This document shows, piece by piece, positions 7,271-48,397 of a stretch of DNA of 64,000 bases (positions are counted from its first letter, which is position 1; the number at the start of each line of letters is the position of its first letter). The position numbers were made by a program, and so were the translations under genes. This stretch comes from Utricularia gibba (taxonomy: Eukaryota > Plantae > Magnoliophyta): positions 868,001 to 932,000 of the forward strand of contig CM007990.1 in NCBI GenBank assembly GCA_002189035.1, in the 5' to 3' direction. A model generated the notes under the pieces. That model saw only the letters and a program-made list of their open reading frames with translations. It was not told the DNA's origin and ran no database searches.

Positions 7271-7567
7271 TAAGTGAATTATCATATTTATTATATATGT
7301 GTGTAATAAGATAACAGATTACATGAATATCTGTAAATAATTAAGTGAATTGTCATCTTTATTATATATGTGTGTAATAAGATAACAGATTACATGAATA
7401 TCTGTAAATAATTAAGTGAATTGTCATCTTTATTATATATGTGTGTAATAAGATAACAGATTACATGAATTATCTGTAAATAATTAAGTGAATTGTCATC
7501 TTTATTATATATGTGTGTAATAAGATAACAGATTACATGAATATCTGTAAATAATTAAGTGAATTAT
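7271..7567. repeat. Tandem minisatellite, four near-identical 71-72 bp units plus a partial unit
   Basis: Unit TAAGTGAATT(G/A)TCAT(C/A)TTTATTATATATGTGTGTAATAAGATAACAGATTACATGAATATCTGTAAATAAT starts at 7271, 7342, 7413, 7485 and 7556. No spacers between units. Confidence 0.95.
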
Positions 7568-8199
7568 TATGTATGGTATTACATGAATACAATGGTGATG
7601 GGAATCTTGGGAATAATATTATCATTTTAATATATACATAGTAAGATAATACAAAATATGATTTTTATAATCTGATTTTTTTTAGTATATAAAAGGACTC
7701 CATCCATTGTGTACATGACAGTGTACGGTATTCTAATTTTACATGTATCATACATTTCAAACTGGCGCCGCCGCCGCTGGTGATGCGGGTGGGTCCATCT
7801 GTTCTGCTGCAGCATCCAACATGGGAAGGGAAGGGCGACAAGGAGGAGTACGGAGCAGCTATCAGGGAGAAACCCAGAGCTACAAGAAGCTCCAAGGCGT
7901 GAAGTACATACAGTACATGGACAGGAGGAAGAGACAGCGAAATTCGGATGTTGGTGCCTCAGCCTCAGCACTCCTGGTTTTCACATCATCTTCAACGATG
8001 GGATAGACTCAATGGGTGCGTGTAATATGTATGTAATCTGAGATCAGATTATAGGAGGAGGAACAGGGCAGGGCATATCCCTCCCTTGCAGTTCCGCCGC
8101 CCTGCCCTGCCCCTGATATATTACACATGGCGCATCCATTCGCGCTGTTTCTTGATTTCTTGCTTCCGGGGTCGGAGTTGTTTCCAGTTTCTCGACTCA

Positions 8200-9149
8200 A
8201 TGTGTGCTTCCGGAGAAGATTTCAGTAGCAGCAGCAACTCGTGGAACGTGAGTGCATCCCCTGTTTCACTCATCTCCACTTATAATGGAGTGGAGGTACG
8301 GAGTGACTCTCTGGGGTCGTTGAGGGACGTCACAGAATGCGTAATGGAGATGAATCAGGAGGTGGGGAGATTGGTTTTGGACTCCAACAAGGACAACGTT
8401 TTCGCCCTTGTTGAAGATTACATGGAAAACACCCTCCAGGCGCTCGATTTCTGCACTTTTGTTGAGGAATCCCTGAAGCGTGCACGCAGCGACACCCAGC
8501 TCCTGAGCCGGATGCCCATCCAGGAGCACTCTAAAAGGCTGCAACATTTGAAGCGCTTAAAGGAAACAGGGGATCCCTTCACACGGGATTTCCTCCACCT
8601 TTTTCAGTCTCTTCATCTCAACCAAATCTCTTTGCTAGAGAAGCTGCAGCAGGAAAAGAAGAAGCTTGATCAGAAGCTGAAATCGATCAAGCGATGGAGA
8701 AGAATTTCAATTATCATATGTGGGACTACGTTCGCCGCGGTGGTGATCGGTTCCGTGGTGGCCGCGGCATTGGCTGCGCCGCCTGTGGCTGCTGCTGCAG
8801 TCGCCGCGGCGACGGCGATTCCTCTGGGTTCAATTGGAAAGTGGGTAGATTCGCTGATGAAGAATCAGGAAAAAGAGGTGAAGAGACAGAAGGAGATCCT
8901 GAACTCCTTGATGGTGGGAACGTGCATAGCCATCAAGGATCTTGATAAGCTGGAAATGGAACTTGAATCCATGATTAAGAACACTAACGAGGACGCGGTG
9001 AAGATGAGCGTGGAGCAGAGGAAGAAGCAAATTAGCGTTTTCATGAAGAATGTGGAGGACCTCGGGGCGCAGGCTGAGAATTGCAGCCGGGATATCCGCG
9101 GGCGAGGACGGTGGTTCTCCAGCGGATCATTAAGCCACCGGTTGACTGA
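8200..9149 (+). CDS. UPF0496 / DUF677 family protein (intronless, divergent); 1-nt frameshift near C-terminus
   Basis: Motifs GVEVR..SLRDVTECVMEMNQEV, LVEDYMENTLQALDFC, KSIKRWRRIS, VAAALAAPPVAAA, PLGSIGKWVDSL. Restoring one base near 9100 gives the conserved ending DIRRARTVVLQRIIKPPVD* (TGA 9147-9149). Start codon is uncertain; 8200 is the first in-frame ATG. Confidence 0.75.
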
Positions 9150-9308
9150 TGATGGCACCCTTGACACTATAATAATATGATGTAACTGTTTATGATATTA
9201 AATGTACAAATTTGAATGAAAATTAGATGAAAGTTAGATGTTTAAAGATATTCTCTTGCGAATTTCAATCCAGATGTTAGAATTTGGAAGACTTGCATTT
9301 CTCTCTAA

Positions 9309-39288: not shown

Positions 39289-40469
39289 GCCTGGCACATG
39301 GATGCAAAATGATTCATTCTTGGGAATGAAGCGTTGGTTCAGATTGGCATACGATGGAGGAGCTGTCTCCTGCCGCAGAATCACAGTTTTGATTGATAAC
39401 AGTTTCTATTGTTGTGGTCACTTCCTTTTAGTGGGCTGTTTAGTTGTTTATTTTGTGTCTGCACTGGCCTTGTTACTGCTACTATCCACTTGGCTTGTTC
39501 AGTGTCTACGTTTCAGGTGCTTTCTTTCATATTTTTGTACTACATTACTTCATTAGTCACATGGCTGATTGGAGGTGGAGCCATACATTAGAGGTGGAGT
39601 CATGCATTACAGGGTAACTATGAAGACAGCCTTAAAGATCGCCAAGGAATTCTTGTGCCCAAGATCAAACCAAATGAAATCTATTCACATCTCTTTGGAG
39701 ATCAGTAATGCTAAAGATTAGAATTTTTTTATGACAAGCTAACATGAACAGGTTGTACATGGGGGATAACATGATGGTTAGACGGACACAGGCAGAGATA
39801 GGTAAGAGACTTCACTTATTCTGGTTAATCTAAAACATAAAGTCTAATTCTTGTTCTTGTTGAAATTGGATAAGTGAAAGTTACTTTCTTATCATTCAAT
39901 GAGCATCTTAGATTTGTGTTTGGTGCGATCAGAGTATTGAAATAATGGATCATTTCATGTTTGCATGTATCTTGTTAAATTGTCTATGGAGATGTAGATT
40001 GGATTGGTGACATCTTAACAGGTCAATCATATATATCTATCTCAACATGAGACTCATTTTGTCCAAGTTGAATTCAATCAAAAAGTCAAACAAGCATAGT
40101 TTTCTATCATTATTTCTATGGTGTGGCATATATGGCAACTATGAAATAAGAAGCAGTTCAATGAACAAAGCAATGGAATCGTGGAAATGATCAAAAAGAG
40201 TTTATACTTCATACAAAGTGAGTTCATGTCACAGTTACAAACAAGAGAGAACTTCAACATGATCCCTATTAATGATTGGTTGAGAGGGCAATGGAAAGAA
40301 CTCCCCCTCCAAACCTAATGGGTATTGGTTTCAAATTTGACAGGTTAATAGAGGCTAAAATATAGAAAGATGTCGTTAACGGTGAAAAGAAACATTCTAG
40401 TTTTTCTACTAACTGTAAAAAAATACAAAAAAAAAAAACTTTATTATAATTTGTTACACCGAATCTTGT

Positions 40470-42114
40470 TCAGAGCTGAACCTTTTCTAAATCTGATCGG
40501 AATTTGAACACGCTTGGGAAGATCATGTCCAGTTTCACTTTTCTTGAGCTCTGATCTTGTAAATTCTGAAACACCACCTGATACACTCCCCTCAAGAAGA
40601 CGATCCCAGCATTGTACATGCCCTCAACACTCAGGTTGCTATATCCATCAAGCTCTTTCCTCTTCACTTGTATTCCCTTACCCCATCTCCACTCTTTCAG
40701 GAACCATATATCCATCAAATCCTTCTTCGGGGAGAGAACTCCGACCATCCCTTCCTGCTCCACCAACTGAAAATTAAATTCTTTCCTCGGTAGAGCTACC
40801 CTCGTATACGACTCCGTGGCAACATCGAAAGCTATAACACTTATGCATGTCAGCCAATACAGCCGAGAGCCCATGGAAATACACGGCTGCGGATCCCACG
40901 CACCTTCGTGTCTGAAGTCCAAGTCCGGCCCTCGCCTCCATCGCCATGTCTCCGAGTCGAAAATCTCGCACATCTGGCGGTTATAGCTATAGAAGGAATG
41001 AGGCATCTTGTAAGTATTGGGCCTCGCATCAATCGACAACCGCACAATCCGATACTGCAGCGGACTCAAACTGAGCACGACGAGCCCCACCTTCTTCGTC
41101 CAATACCGGAGTTTGGGATTCGGAATCGGCCTCCATTGCTGAGCCGCCGGCTTCCCAATGAAGTACCTATCGTAAATCCAACACCAAAACCGACAAAATG
41201 ATCAAGACTATCTCTGGTACGTATACTTATTCTACAATTACTTGTTTGATCGGTGTGTTTAGTTATTAATGAATTTAAATTATTTAAATTTAACTAAACC
41301 CAAATATATGTGTATAAAAATACCTATACCCCCACTTGAGTATACATATATTTATAACTAAGAATATTATATAGATATAATGATTATTACTTATATATAG
41401 AATATAAATATACCTACACATCAAATAATACAATTTTATTAAACCCATCATAAATTAACCTTATAACTTCATAACAAACAAGGTCTAAAGGATTTTTTAA
41501 TCACTTAGGCTATGTTTGATTAGTGTGTTTAAATGTTGATGGATTTAAATTATTTAAATAGATAAATTCAAAAATATGAGTATAAAAACATACATACCCT
41601 TTTAGATATATATATATTCATATATAATGATATTATATGAATATAATATCACAAATCAATCTTACACCTTCATATCAAATAAGTTATTACGATTAAATAA
41701 GCCTATAAAAAACATTATTTCATATAAACTAATTAAACTAGATTTCAATTATAAATACGAAATTCCACACCTCTTATTCAATACTAAATTTCAAACATAC
41801 CTCGGCTTCCTCCATTCTCTGGTAACACCACACACGAGCCCCTGGCTGCATGCCGCCAGTATCTGCATATCCCCAAGGAACTCCATCGAATTCGGGCTGC
41901 TTTTACAAGGTGACACAAATCGTGTGCGTCCATTTTCATTCAGCAAGTACCCGGAGATGATCCCCGTCTTCTCGCACAACTCCGACATGAAGCATGTTTC
42001 GTTGATCATCTTCTTCCACTCCTTGGACACAACTTTGCATGTGTCCAGCGTTTGCAATGTTGTGACTCGGGATAAAATCTCGTATTCGATATCGGAAGGC
42101 GTACTAGAATCCAT
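40470..42114 (-). CDS. F-box protein with F-box-associated domain (copy B), two exons separated by a 634-nt phase-2 intron
   Basis: Exon 1 42114-41801, intron 41800-41167 (GTATGT...TTACGATAG), exon 2 41166-40470. Splicing restores the frame (..WRKP-R-YFIGKP..), collinear with copy A. Confidence 0.85.
41240..41800. mobile_element. Two tandem, mutually homologous Tourist-like MITE copies inside the F-box B intron
   Basis: Copy 1 is about 41240-41485 (CTTGTTTG...CAAACAAGGTC then TAA). Copy 2 starts near 41507 (TTA then GGCTATGTTTG). Shared interior ATTTAAATTATTTAAAT and GTATAAAAA. The right end of copy 2 is ambiguous (about 41735 or 41801). Confidence 0.55.
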
Positions 42115-42346
42115 GAAATAATTATAATGATACAAAAAACATGCAATATATACTGAAGTATAATGTATGTATTTATAAAATTGAAAATATTAAAAATTCA
42201 AAGATTGAATACATATGTTATTTCATGGGTATTATTTAACTTAACTTTTGATTAACATAAACTACTATAACATAGTTTTTTAGGGAATTTGTTATAGTGT
42301 TTTTTAATTTGCTTATAATTATTAATAAAATATTAAAAATAAAATT

Positions 42347-42348
<2 letters not shown>

Positions 42349-42378
<30 letters not shown>
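42349..42378. repeat. (AAT)10 microsatellite
   Basis: Seen directly. Confidence 0.85.
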
Positions 42379-42969
42379 TTGATAATCCCACTTTAAAAAA
42401 TTGGAGAAAATTACAATAACAATACTTTAAATTTTAATTATTATTAAAAATCTAACATTCAAGTTTCAAAATTATAAAAAAAAAATAATTCAAATTATCA
42501 AAATCACACAATAAAAATTTAAATGGTTTTCAAAAATTTTAAAAAGTAAATATATTCACGATATCATAAATCAGCTCTCATTTCAAACTCAATAGAATTT
42601 TGTATTAGGATTTTCGTATTCACATCTAAAGTTTGGTAAATTAAATGATAGCCATGTTAGGATTATATTTTATTTGTATCTCATATGATTTAAAGTGATG
42701 ATGATGATTATATCACATTTATGTTTATAAAAAAAGATAATTTAAAGAGTTGATGACATAATTTTAAAATTTGAAGGTTTAATTTATTTATATCCATTGT
42801 AAGTTGAGATGATGTCACCAAACCCCACCTTTCTCAATTGTTTATGAAAAGTAAGTAAATATTATAATTATTAATTAATTTTAAAAGAGTAAAAATTATA
42901 ATAATATGATAATTCCACGCAGAAGTTACTAGAAGCAGAGCAGTGATCAGATGGCGACTCCGCCGCTTG

Positions 42970-48397
<5,428 letters not shown>

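What the first reader, a model, noticed from the sequence alone, without database searches (positions are those of the whole stretch)
41167..41800. Exact intron presence/absence between two neighbouring F-box paralogues, bounded by an AGGTA direct repeat and filled with MITE DNA
Seen: copy B has a 634-nt GT-AG phase-2 intron (..CCGAG|GTATGT...GATAG|GTAC..). Copy A reads straight through the same site (GAGAGGTAC) with no base lost or gained. AGGTA occurs at both intron ends. Most of the intron is two tandem Tourist-like copies, and the donor GGTATGTTTG resembles their TIR (GGCTATGTTTG). Copy A keeps the homologous TATA region and intron-containing neighbours, so it is a DNA-level duplicate, not a retrocopy. 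Inference: either (i) precise intron loss in A by microhomology-mediated deletion, which fits the other microhomology deletions in the A block, or (ii) intron gain in B by insertion into a proto-splice site, with a transposon end supplying the donor. Either would be a local case where the mechanism can be read from the sequence.
Basis: partly seen in the sequence, partly recalled or inferred. Interest (0 to 1): 0.8.

Follow-up and report, generated by a model that had tools for sequence, protein, structure and literature searches.

The report
Lineage-specific intron in one F-box paralogue
One of two neighbouring plant F-box gene copies carries a 634-base AT-rich insert with perfect splice signals at a position where the other copy and all relatives checked have none, so it is probably a newly gained intron, a known kind of event whose mechanism cannot be read from this sequence and whose splicing is not yet shown.

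Summary
Copy B (minus strand, ATG 42114, stop 40470) has a 634-nt GT..AG phase-2 insert at 41167-41800. Copy A (19134-20147, plus strand) reads through the same site with no base gained or lost. AGGTA stands at both insert ends. About two thirds of the insert is two related Tourist-like units.

New here: four annotated relatives (Erythranthe, Buddleja, Castilleja, Cuscuta) and three unannotated contigs all have one phase-2 intron about 60 codons downstream and none at B's site. A and B both lack that family intron. B's intron position is therefore lineage-specific and had to be gained. The open question is whether the gain came after the duplication (favoured, about 0.47 as a spliced intron) or before it, with precise loss in A (about 0.25).

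- The Tourist-like units are internal, and the 114-nt head that carries the donor is unrelated to them.
- GTATGTTT donors also occur in the relatives' introns.
- Three of eight neighbouring introns already have a 4-nt AG|GT overlap.

Splicing is not shown. Four RNA runs cover only exon 2, and one contig runs 16 nt into the insert. B's intact frame argues for splicing or a recent insertion.

This is a new member of a known kind. Other notes of this scan list further candidate repeat-flanked intron gains on other DNA of this genome.

The parts
40470..41166 (-). Copy B exon 2 (697 nt including the TGA stop); beta-propeller part of the F-box protein
   Evidence: Open frame continuous with exon 1 after exact removal of 41167-41800. 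Transcribed at low depth in four RNA runs; the contigs of X1-X3 are 100% identical to the window.
41167..41800 (-). 634-nt insert or intron of copy B: GT..AG, phase 2, 78% A+T
   Evidence: Absent from A without any indel. No RNA junction seen. One X4 contig runs from exon 2 to 41182 unspliced.
41801..42114 (-). Copy B exon 1 (314 nt; F-box-like domain)
   Evidence: Pfam F-box-like, E 0.0015. Not covered by any contig in the four RNA runs.
41798..41802 (-). Upstream AGGTA (AG of exon 1 plus donor GTA)
   Evidence: Read directly from the sequence.
41164..41168 (-). Downstream AGGTA (acceptor AG plus GTA of exon 2)
   Evidence: Read directly from the sequence.
41241..41485 (+). Tourist-like unit M1 (245 nt): TTA|CTTGTTTGAT...ACAAACAAGGTC|TAA
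   Evidence: Perfect 8-nt terminal inverted repeat CTTGTTTG/CAAACAAG. Homologous to M2 (E 3e-20, families D1-D3). The flanks TTA and TAA differ by one base.
41508..41683 (+). Tourist-like unit M2 (176 nt): TTA|GGCTATGTTTGAT...ATCAAATAAG|TTA. Same orientation as M1, with an internal deletion of about 65 nt relative to M1.
   Evidence: D1 74%, D2 70%, D3 81% over 36 nt at the right end. Identical TTA on both flanks, as expected for a PIF/Harbinger TWA target duplication (PMC5172404, PMC2213677).
41687..41800 (-). 114-nt head of the insert carrying the donor GTATGTTTGA; origin unknown
   Evidence: No significant similarity to M1 or M2 on either strand, and none elsewhere in the window.
41167..41240 (-). 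74-nt tail of the insert with a U-rich tract and the acceptor GATAG; origin unknown
   Evidence: No significant similarity to M1 or M2.
19134..20147 (+). Copy A: intronless intact F-box / beta-propeller gene (337 aa)
   Evidence: Pfam b-prop_At3g26010-like, E 2e-7, plus weak F-box. 81% amino-acid identity to B (271 of 336).
19446..19450 (+). Single AGGTA in A at the site homologous to B's intron (junction 19447/19448)
18773..21067 (+). A block: inverted, deletion-eroded DNA-level copy of the B region
   Evidence: Self-BLAST: 18773-19450 matches 42450-41798, 19443-20145 matches 41171-40472, four downstream fragments match 39514-38332, and 20671-21067 matches 48111-47671. Junction overlaps are 6, 1 and 3 nt.

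Best explanation
B's 634-nt insert is a lineage-specific spliceosomal intron at a new position. It was most likely created after the A/B duplication, when about 630 nt of AT-rich DNA entered an AG|GTA proto-splice site of an intronless F-box gene.

Proposed order of events:
1. The common ancestor of A and B lost the single phase-2 intron that this F-box subfamily carries in other lamiids. (Shown.)
2. The intronless gene was duplicated at the DNA level, in inverted orientation. (Shown.)
3. B acquired the insert. (Polarity inferred by parsimony.)
4. Because the insert is bounded by AG|GTA...AG|GTA, is 78% A+T and sits between exons of about 50% A+T, the plant spliceosome can remove it exactly and restore the A-type reading frame. 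(Inferred, not observed.)

The two Tourist-like units lie inside the insert, each with its own TTA flanks. They were either carried in with the captured DNA or inserted later. They do not supply either splice site.
For: - Outgroups: E. guttata, Buddleja alternifolia, Castilleja foliolosa and Cuscuta campestris each have exactly one intron, phase 2, in the RLS...|...CEIF linker. All read straight through the site homologous to B's intron.
- Three unannotated Logan contigs carrying the closest relatives found (43-50% identity) show the same structure.
- The protein alignment is colinear and gap-free at B's site.
- A and B are single ORFs through the family-intron site, so they lack that intron.
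- B's frame is intact across the exact junction. Under neutrality, keeping the frame (about 0.025) and avoiding stops (about 0.07) together have probability about 0.002. A-B dN/dS is 0.51 overall and 0.29 in exon 1.
- The insert is unlike resident introns. It is 634 nt and 78% A+T, against 70-98 nt and 53-64% A+T for eight RNA-verified neighbouring introns. This fits a late arrival in a genome with tiny introns.
- The A block has lost most of the downstream non-coding and pseudogene sequence still present in B since the duplication. An insert older than the duplication would be expected to have shrunk in B as well.
- Precedent: two of five introns gained after segmental duplication in rice were TE-like (PMC1779517). 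Capture of DNA at staggered breaks gives repeat-flanked new introns (PMC3020277).
Against: - No spliced junction 41801/41166 was seen in four RNA runs. Exon 1 is uncovered in all four. One X4 contig continues 16 nt from exon 2 into the insert.
- The outgroups are distant (34-40% identity full length, 43-50% for the partial Logan ORFs). No sister species or other same-genome paralogue could be examined.
- The stem branch before the duplication is long, so the gain could predate the duplication.
- The A block shows several microhomology-bounded deletions, which makes a precise AGGTA-to-AGGTA deletion in A credible.
- The most similar A/B stretch (no synonymous change in codons 98-125) straddles the site. 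A cDNA-mediated conversion would also produce that pattern.
- The insert has no recognisable single-element structure (no terminal repeats of its own, no poly-A, no TG..CA ends). Its source is unknown.
Confidence: 0.47

Rival explanations
1. The intron was gained on the long stem branch before the A/B duplication, and copy A later lost it precisely. The loss would have come either from end joining on the 5-nt AGGTA microhomology after a break inside the intron, or from recombination with a cDNA of a spliced mRNA.
For: - The A block is a deletion-eroded copy. Relative to B it lacks segments of 957, 551, 96 and 55 nt, with 6-, 1- and 3-nt overlaps at three junctions.
- AG|GT microhomology between the two splice sites is the proposed substrate for precise intron deletion (PMC3020277).
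- In duplicated rice genes, losses outnumber gains 49 to 5 (PMC1779517).
- The stem branch is several times longer than the B branch (80% against 34-50% identity), so a gain is a priori more likely to have fallen on it.
- Codons 98-125, which span the site, carry no synonymous difference. Exon 2 dS is 0.14 against 0.37 in exon 1. Both are compatible with a conversion tract across the junction.
Against: - It needs two rare events where one suffices.
- Loss rates per intron are low, about 3e-10 per year in rice (PMC1779517).
- B's intron would have had to stay about seven times the local intron size through the whole post-duplication period, in a genome that deletes neutral DNA heavily.
- The change-point in synonymous differences is not significant when scanned along the gene (permutation p 0.08).
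- The 5-nt overlap is not exceptional for this genome.
Confidence: 0.25
2. The insert is a disruption, not a working intron. DNA entered B's coding sequence, the gene is no longer expressed as a full-length spliced mRNA, and only exon 2 is transcribed, either as read-through or from a start inside the AT-rich insert. B would then be a young pseudogene or truncated gene, and the GT..AG ends follow from duplication of an AGGTA target.
For: - Four RNA runs cover exon 2 only, with no exon 1 and no junction. One contig reads from exon 2 16 nt into the insert, while intergenic DNA around it is uncovered, so DNA contamination is unlikely.
- B carries more derived residues than A (25 against 13, p 0.07).
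- Exon 2 dN/dS is 0.72.
- Any insertion that duplicates AGGTA creates AG|GTA at both ends automatically.
Against: - Contigs at depth 2-6 with an apparent 3' bias cannot show absence. The tool's own output says a hole proves nothing.
- B has no stop and no frameshift in 1008 nt, where neutrality gives about 0.002. The disruption would therefore have to be recent.
- An exon-2-only RNA is open only 36 nt into the insert. Its first in-frame Met (ATG 41006) would give an F-box-less 178-aa fragment.
- The donor GAG|GTATGT, the U-rich acceptor tract and the strong A+T contrast are what plant splicing needs (established knowledge of plant intron recognition).
Confidence: 0.2
3. A and B are mis-assembled haplotypes, or A is a retrocopy of B.
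For: None beyond the intron difference itself.
Against: - The copies are inverted, 21 kb apart, 88% identical in coding sequence and 67% identical upstream, with 10 indel events upstream.
- A shares about 360 nt of promoter-side sequence, including the TATA box, and downstream fragments of B's neighbour. It has no poly-A tract.
Confidence: 0.01

Closest known systems
[quoted passage not shown] 2006, PMC1779517)
   Same: One member of a duplicated pair has an intron that the other lacks. Polarity is assigned with an outgroup. Two of the five gained rice introns resembled transposable elements, as here.
   Different: - Here the outgroups are distant and the species' own relatives are unavailable.
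- This gene lineage had first lost its only ancestral intron.
- The new intron is not supported by cDNA, whereas the rice cases were.
Intron gain by capture of DNA at a staggered double-strand break, giving short direct repeats over the splice sites (Daphnia, Drosophila, Aspergillus; reviewed by Farlow et al. 2011, PMC3020277)
   Same: A 5-nt direct repeat, AGGTA, overlaps both splice sites. The insert has unknown, non-autonomous origin. The site in the intronless copy is an AG|GT proto-splice site.
   Different: - The repeat is no longer than splice consensus alone often gives in this genome (4 nt in 3 of 8 neighbouring introns).
- No population polymorphism or source locus of the captured DNA is known.
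Microhomology-mediated precise intron deletion (NHEJ model; PMC3020277)
   Same: AG|GT(A) stands at both splice sites and a single AGGTA remains in the intronless copy. Neighbouring DNA of that copy shows microhomology deletions.
   Different: Outgroups show that the intron is not ancestral to the family, so a loss would also need an earlier gain. Nothing in A marks a deletion event.
Introner elements and MITE-derived introns (Micromonas and others; PMC9860276, PMC11282704)
   Same: MITE-like DNA with inverted ends and a 3-nt target duplication lies in the intron. The idea tested was that an element end plus its target duplication supply the splice sites.
   Different: - The Tourist-like units are internal, and neither end of the intron is an element end.
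- The 5-nt repeat does not match the TWA 3-nt duplication of PIF/Harbinger elements.
- No family of similar introns is known here.

Membership tests
Spliceosomal (U2-type GT-AG) intron | GT donor and AG acceptor whose exact removal restores an open reading frame | tested here: met
   GAG|GTATGT...GATAG|GTAC. Removing 41167-41800 gives an intact 336-aa ORF colinear with A.
Spliceosomal (U2-type GT-AG) intron | Removal from the RNA, shown by junction reads | tested here: inconclusive
   No 41801/41166 joint in four RNA runs. Exon 1 is uncovered. One contig is unspliced at the acceptor. The same runs show all eight introns of the neighbouring gene. Depth over B is only 2-6 and the data are contigs.
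Recently gained (lineage-specific) intron | Position absent from outgroup homologues with a reliable alignment around the site | tested here: met
   Four annotated genes and three unannotated contigs read through the site. The alignment is gap-free there.
Recently gained (lineage-specific) intron | Absence in the closest sister lineages, which would time the gain after the duplication | not testable with these tools
   No homologue above 50% identity is in the protein collection. A's protein is not on record. Searches with exon 1 and of metagenome contigs found nothing.
Tourist-like MITE (PIF/Harbinger-mobilised) | Short terminal inverted repeats of the GGCCTTGTTTG type (motif recalled from own knowledge) | tested here: met
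   M1: CTTGTTTG / CAAACAAG (GACCTTGTTTG at one end). M2: GGCTATGTTTGAT / ATCAAATAAG.
Tourist-like MITE (PIF/Harbinger-mobilised) | 3-nt TWA target-site duplication | tested here: met
   M2 has TTA on both flanks. M1 has TTA and TAA, one mismatch. TWA duplications are described in PMC5172404 and PMC2213677.
Tourist-like MITE (PIF/Harbinger-mobilised) | Multiple dispersed copies in the genome (a family) | tested here: inconclusive
   Only the two adjacent units exist in the 64-kb window. The rest of the genome could not be searched.
Introner-type transposon-born intron | An element end plus its target duplication provide the two splice sites | tested here: not met
   The head (114 nt) and tail (74 nt) that carry the splice sites are unrelated to the units. 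The 5-nt AGGTA does not match a TWA duplication.
F-box protein with At3g26010-like / FBA beta-propeller | N-terminal F-box plus C-terminal FBA / beta-propeller domain | tested here: met
   Pfam PF24750 E 2e-7 (above cut-off). F-box and F-box-like are weak, E about 0.002 and below cut-off. Homologues carry FBA_1, FBA_3 and F-box-like.

The most novel reading that the evidence does not exclude
This fast-evolving, small Lamiales genome may have an ongoing process that creates new introns by inserting DNA at AG|GT sites with short target duplications. B's intron would be its largest example and the best controlled one, because an intronless paralogue 21 kb away preserves the empty site.

Other notes of this scan, unchecked here, list candidate repeat-flanked gained introns elsewhere in this genome: in two Dof genes (two follow-ups reported clean splicing), a UGT (also AGGTA), an NGATHA B3 gene and a PUB22/23-type gene.

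If these share one mechanism, intron gain in a flowering plant could be studied as a process rather than as isolated cases.
Probability: 0.2. Interest if true: 0.7.

Novelty: new member of a known kind. Interest (0 to 1): 0.4.

Why it matters
New introns are rare in flowering plants, and their origin is seldom traceable. This pair gives an empty site and a filled site side by side in one genome. The outgroups show that the filled state is the derived one for the family. The same gene lineage had earlier lost its only ancestral intron, so it records intron turnover: one lost, then one gained 60 codons upstream.

Taken alone it is one more example of a documented pattern, and the mechanism stays ambiguous. 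Its value would rise if splicing is confirmed and if the other repeat-flanked candidate gains in this genome prove to share a mechanism.

Tried and rejected
- **Donor from a transposon end.** Local alignment of the 114-nt head and the 74-nt tail against M1 and M2, both strands, with 300 shuffles each, gave p about 0.3-1.0. Rejected.
- **Tandem duplication of exon sequence as the intron's source.** The B region has no similarity between insert and exons, nor to anything else in the window at E 1e-5. Rejected.
- **M1/M2 as an in-situ tandem duplication.** The flanks outside the inverted ends are unrelated and each unit has its own TTA flanks. Two insertions or a MITE dimer are more likely. Multimers are common (PMC5172404).
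- **Single-element readings of the whole insert.** There are no terminal repeats of its own, no TG..CA ends and no poly-A on either strand (read). No solo LTR, SINE or LINE fits.
- **An RNA gene inside the insert.** Rfam gave only a chance mir-753 match, 23 bits against a gathering score of 62. The fold z-score is -2.2.
- **Closer relatives or more copies.** A's exact protein is not on record. B's exon 1 as a query found nothing. The metagenome scan found nothing. The Daucus homologue's locus is not on record.
- **Species identification.** The DUF677 gene at 8086-9177 has best hits of only about 50% identity, spread over all angiosperms.
- **Change-point test for a conversion boundary at the intron site.** The maximum-likelihood break falls at codon 99, but permutation p is 0.08.
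Full report
**Observation.**
The window was read on both strands around the finding.
- Copy B lies on the minus strand. Its ATG is at 42114. Exon 1 is 42114-41801 (314 nt), the insert is 41800-41167 (634 nt), and exon 2 is 41166-40470 and ends in TGA.
- The insert begins GAG|GTATGTTTGA and ends GATAG|GTAC. Because 314 = 3 x 104 + 2, it is phase 2.
- Exact removal gives an intact 336-aa ORF. The unspliced reading stops two codons after the donor.
- Copy A lies on the plus strand at 19134-20147. It is a single intact ORF of 337 aa. At 19447/19448 it reads GAGAG|GTAC and aligns to B with no base gained or lost.
- The two proteins are 81% identical (271 of 336) and the coding sequences 88%. Pfam finds the At3g26010-like F-box beta-propeller and weak F-box matches.
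- AGGTA stands at both ends of the insert, and the repeat is exactly 5 nt.

**A is a DNA-level duplicate, not a haplotype or a retrocopy.**
Self-BLAST shows the A block (18773-21067) as an inverted copy of the B region.
- It includes about 360 nt upstream of the ATG, 67% identical with 10 indel events. The TATAAATA box lies in both copies.
- It includes four fragments of the 3' end of B's convergent neighbour gene, and a piece from 47671-48111.
- Relative to B, the A block lacks segments of 957, 551, 96 and 55 nt. Three junctions overlap by 6, 1 and 3 nt, and two carry 22-26 nt of filler.

**Polarity from outgroups.**
The best homologues in the 5.8-billion-protein collection are 34-40% identical over their full length: Erythranthe, Buddleja, Sesamum and Castilleja (all Lamiales), plus Daucus and Cuscuta. 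Two partial ORFs from unannotated Logan contigs reach 43-50%.

I fetched the loci and mapped the exons.
- E. guttata has a 93-nt intron, Buddleja alternifolia 1475 nt, Castilleja foliolosa 72 nt and Cuscuta campestris 178 nt.
- Each has exactly one intron, phase 2, in the linker between the conserved RYKIVRLS and CEIFDSE motifs.
- The three Logan contigs have an intron at the same place.
- All seven read straight through the site homologous to B's insert, which lies just before the conserved Y-x-V/I-x-K-P-A motif. The alignment has no gap there.
- A and B are both open through the family-intron site, so both lack that intron.

Two conclusions follow.
- The ancestor of A and B lost the family's only intron.
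- B's insert sits at a position not seen in any relative, so an intron gain in this lineage is needed under every scenario.

What remains open is whether the gain came after the duplication (one event) or before it, followed by a precise loss in A (two events).

**Anatomy of the insert.**
- Two related units lie inside it in the same orientation, 22 nt apart.
- M1 is 41241-41485: TTA|CTTGTTTGAT...ACAAACAAGGTC|TAA.
- M2 is 41508-41683: TTA|GGCTATGTTTGAT...ATCAAATAAG|TTA.
- Their left arms are 70-74% identical. Their right ends are 81% identical over 36 nt. M2 has lost about 65 nt internally.
- The GGC(C/T)(T/A)TGTTTG ends and the TTA flanks fit Tourist-like MITEs, which make TWA duplications (PMC5172404, PMC2213677). 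Adjacent MITE multimers are common (PMC5172404).
- No third copy lies in the window, so a mobile family is plausible but not shown.
- The units make up about 67% of the insert.
- The 114-nt head with the donor and the 74-nt tail with the acceptor show no similarity to the units beyond chance, and none to anything else in the window.
GTATGTTT also starts the family intron in Buddleja and in the Logan contigs. It is a common donor form, not a transposon end.

**The AGGTA repeat.**
The same RNA runs verified eight introns of the neighbouring GH2 beta-galactosidase-like gene. Their boundary overlaps are 4, 4, 0, 2, 1, 4, 3 and 2 nt. A 5-nt overlap is therefore roughly a one-in-ten outcome of the AG|GT consensus.

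It fits three readings equally well: capture at a staggered break, end joining on splice-site microhomology, and plain consensus (PMC3020277). It does not match the 3-nt duplication of a Tourist element. The mechanism cannot be read from it.

**Is the insert spliced?**
- Five RNA runs of the organism held 18-34% of the sampled words of the B region.
- I laid four of them on 40000-45500 at 97% likeness. That threshold keeps out transcripts of A, which is 95% identical just around the junction.
- All eight introns of the neighbouring gene appear as CT..AC joints, so the runs are good RNA.
- Over B, all four runs cover only exon 2 (40459-41182), at depth 2-6.
- No contig touches exon 1 or the body of the insert, and no 41166/41801 joint is seen.
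- One contig of run X4, from a different genotype, runs from exon 2 16 nt into the insert.
- Surrounding intergenic DNA is uncovered, so this is RNA, either unspliced or started inside the insert.

Contigs at this depth show presence, not absence. Splicing is therefore neither shown nor refuted.

An exon-2-only RNA would be open only 36 nt into the insert. Its first in-frame Met is at 41006, which would give an F-box-less fragment.

**Indirect evidence that B is or was a working gene.**
- A and B differ by 116 substitutions and one in-frame codon.
- I used the indel-to-substitution ratio of their own upstream region (0.09, of which 70% would shift the frame). A neutrally evolving B would then keep its frame with probability about 0.025 and avoid stops with probability about 0.07. 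Together that is about 0.002.
- dN/dS is 0.51 overall, 0.29 in exon 1 and 0.72 in exon 2.
- B has somewhat more derived residues than A, 25 against 13, p 0.07.

So either the insert is spliced, or it arrived recently.

The insert's 78% A+T between exons of about 50% A+T, the GAG|GTATGT donor and the U-rich acceptor tract are what plant intron recognition relies on (established knowledge).

**Timing arguments.**

For gain after the duplication:
- It is the more parsimonious reading.
- The insert is seven times longer and much more AT-rich than resident introns (70-98 nt, 53-64% A+T).
- This genome removed most of the downstream non-coding and pseudogene DNA of the A block since the duplication. 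An older insert should have shrunk in B as well.

For gain before the duplication and loss in A:
- The stem branch is much longer than the B branch.
- The A block is deletion-prone, with microhomology at its junctions.
- No synonymous difference occurs in codons 98-125, which span the site.
- Exon 2 dS (0.14) is well below exon 1 dS (0.37) and below the upstream divergence. These could mark a conversion across the junction.
- However, the change-point is not significant when scanned along the gene (p 0.08).

My weights are 0.47 for gain in B as a working intron, 0.25 for earlier gain plus precise loss in A, and 0.20 for an unspliced disruption of B. The remainder covers other readings.

**Comparison with what is known.**
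- The closest precedent is the rice study of segmentally duplicated genes: 49 losses, 5 gains, and two of the gains TE-like (PMC1779517).
- The double-strand-break repair model covers both repeat-flanked gains and microhomology-mediated precise losses (PMC3020277).
- Introner-type origin (PMC9860276, PMC11282704) was tested and not met, because no element end coincides with a splice site.

The case is a new member of a known kind. The extra point is that the same gene lineage first lost its ancestral intron and then acquired another one 60 codons upstream.

**Context from the scan.**
Other notes on this genome (unchecked AI notes) list further candidate gained introns flanked by direct repeats, including one with AGGTA. 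Two follow-ups reported clean splicing in Dof genes. I did not test these. They raise the possibility of a genome-wide process, which is the novel reading I rate at about 0.2.

**Limits.**
- The species was not identified. It is a fast-evolving lineage whose F-box homologues are closest to Lamiales.
- No sister genome, no other paralogue and no raw reads could be examined.

Noticed in passing
window 19134-20147 and 40470-42114, about codons 150-172: A and B both lack the single phase-2 intron that all seven outgroup sequences carry in the RLS...|...CEIF linker. At that spot A and B have about 7 extra residues relative to the outgroups. This could be a relic of an imprecise genomic deletion of that intron rather than retroposition.
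   Followed up: partly
window 19134-20147 vs 40470-42114: Synonymous divergence is uneven: dS 0.37 in exon 1 against 0.14 in exon 2. The last 150 nt of the coding sequence are 95-98% identical, and similarity drops sharply after the stop codon. This suggests gene conversion between the inverted copies, confined to the region 3' of the intron site.
   Followed up: partly
window 40824, 40862, 40872, 41046, 41068: The B allele in RNA run X4 (another genotype) differs from the window at five exon-2 positions, and four of these carry copy A's base. Either the window's B has derived changes, or there is A-to-B conversion that is polymorphic in the species.
   Followed up: partly
window 40459-41182: Transcripts of B seen in four RNA runs cover exon 2 only. 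One contig continues 16 nt into the insert. This could be a transcription start inside the AT-rich, MITE-bearing insert, or a retained intron.
   Followed up: partly
window 42879-45500 (minus strand): A GH2 (LacZ-type) beta-galactosidase-like gene with eight RNA-verified tiny introns (70-98 nt, 53-64% A+T). It is well expressed in all four runs.
   Followed up: partly
window 7271-7565: A tandem repeat with a period of about 71 nt and about four copies, 97-98% identical. It was seen in the window self-comparison.
   Followed up: no
window 20671-21067 vs 47671-48111: The A block ends in a 400-nt piece, 82% identical, copied from about 9.8 kb beyond the rest of its template and joined with a 3-nt overlap. 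The duplicate is a mosaic of non-adjacent segments.
   Followed up: partly
window 8086-9177: A single-exon DUF677/UPF0496 gene whose best hits across all angiosperms are only about 50% identical. This indicates an unusually fast-evolving lineage.
   Followed up: no
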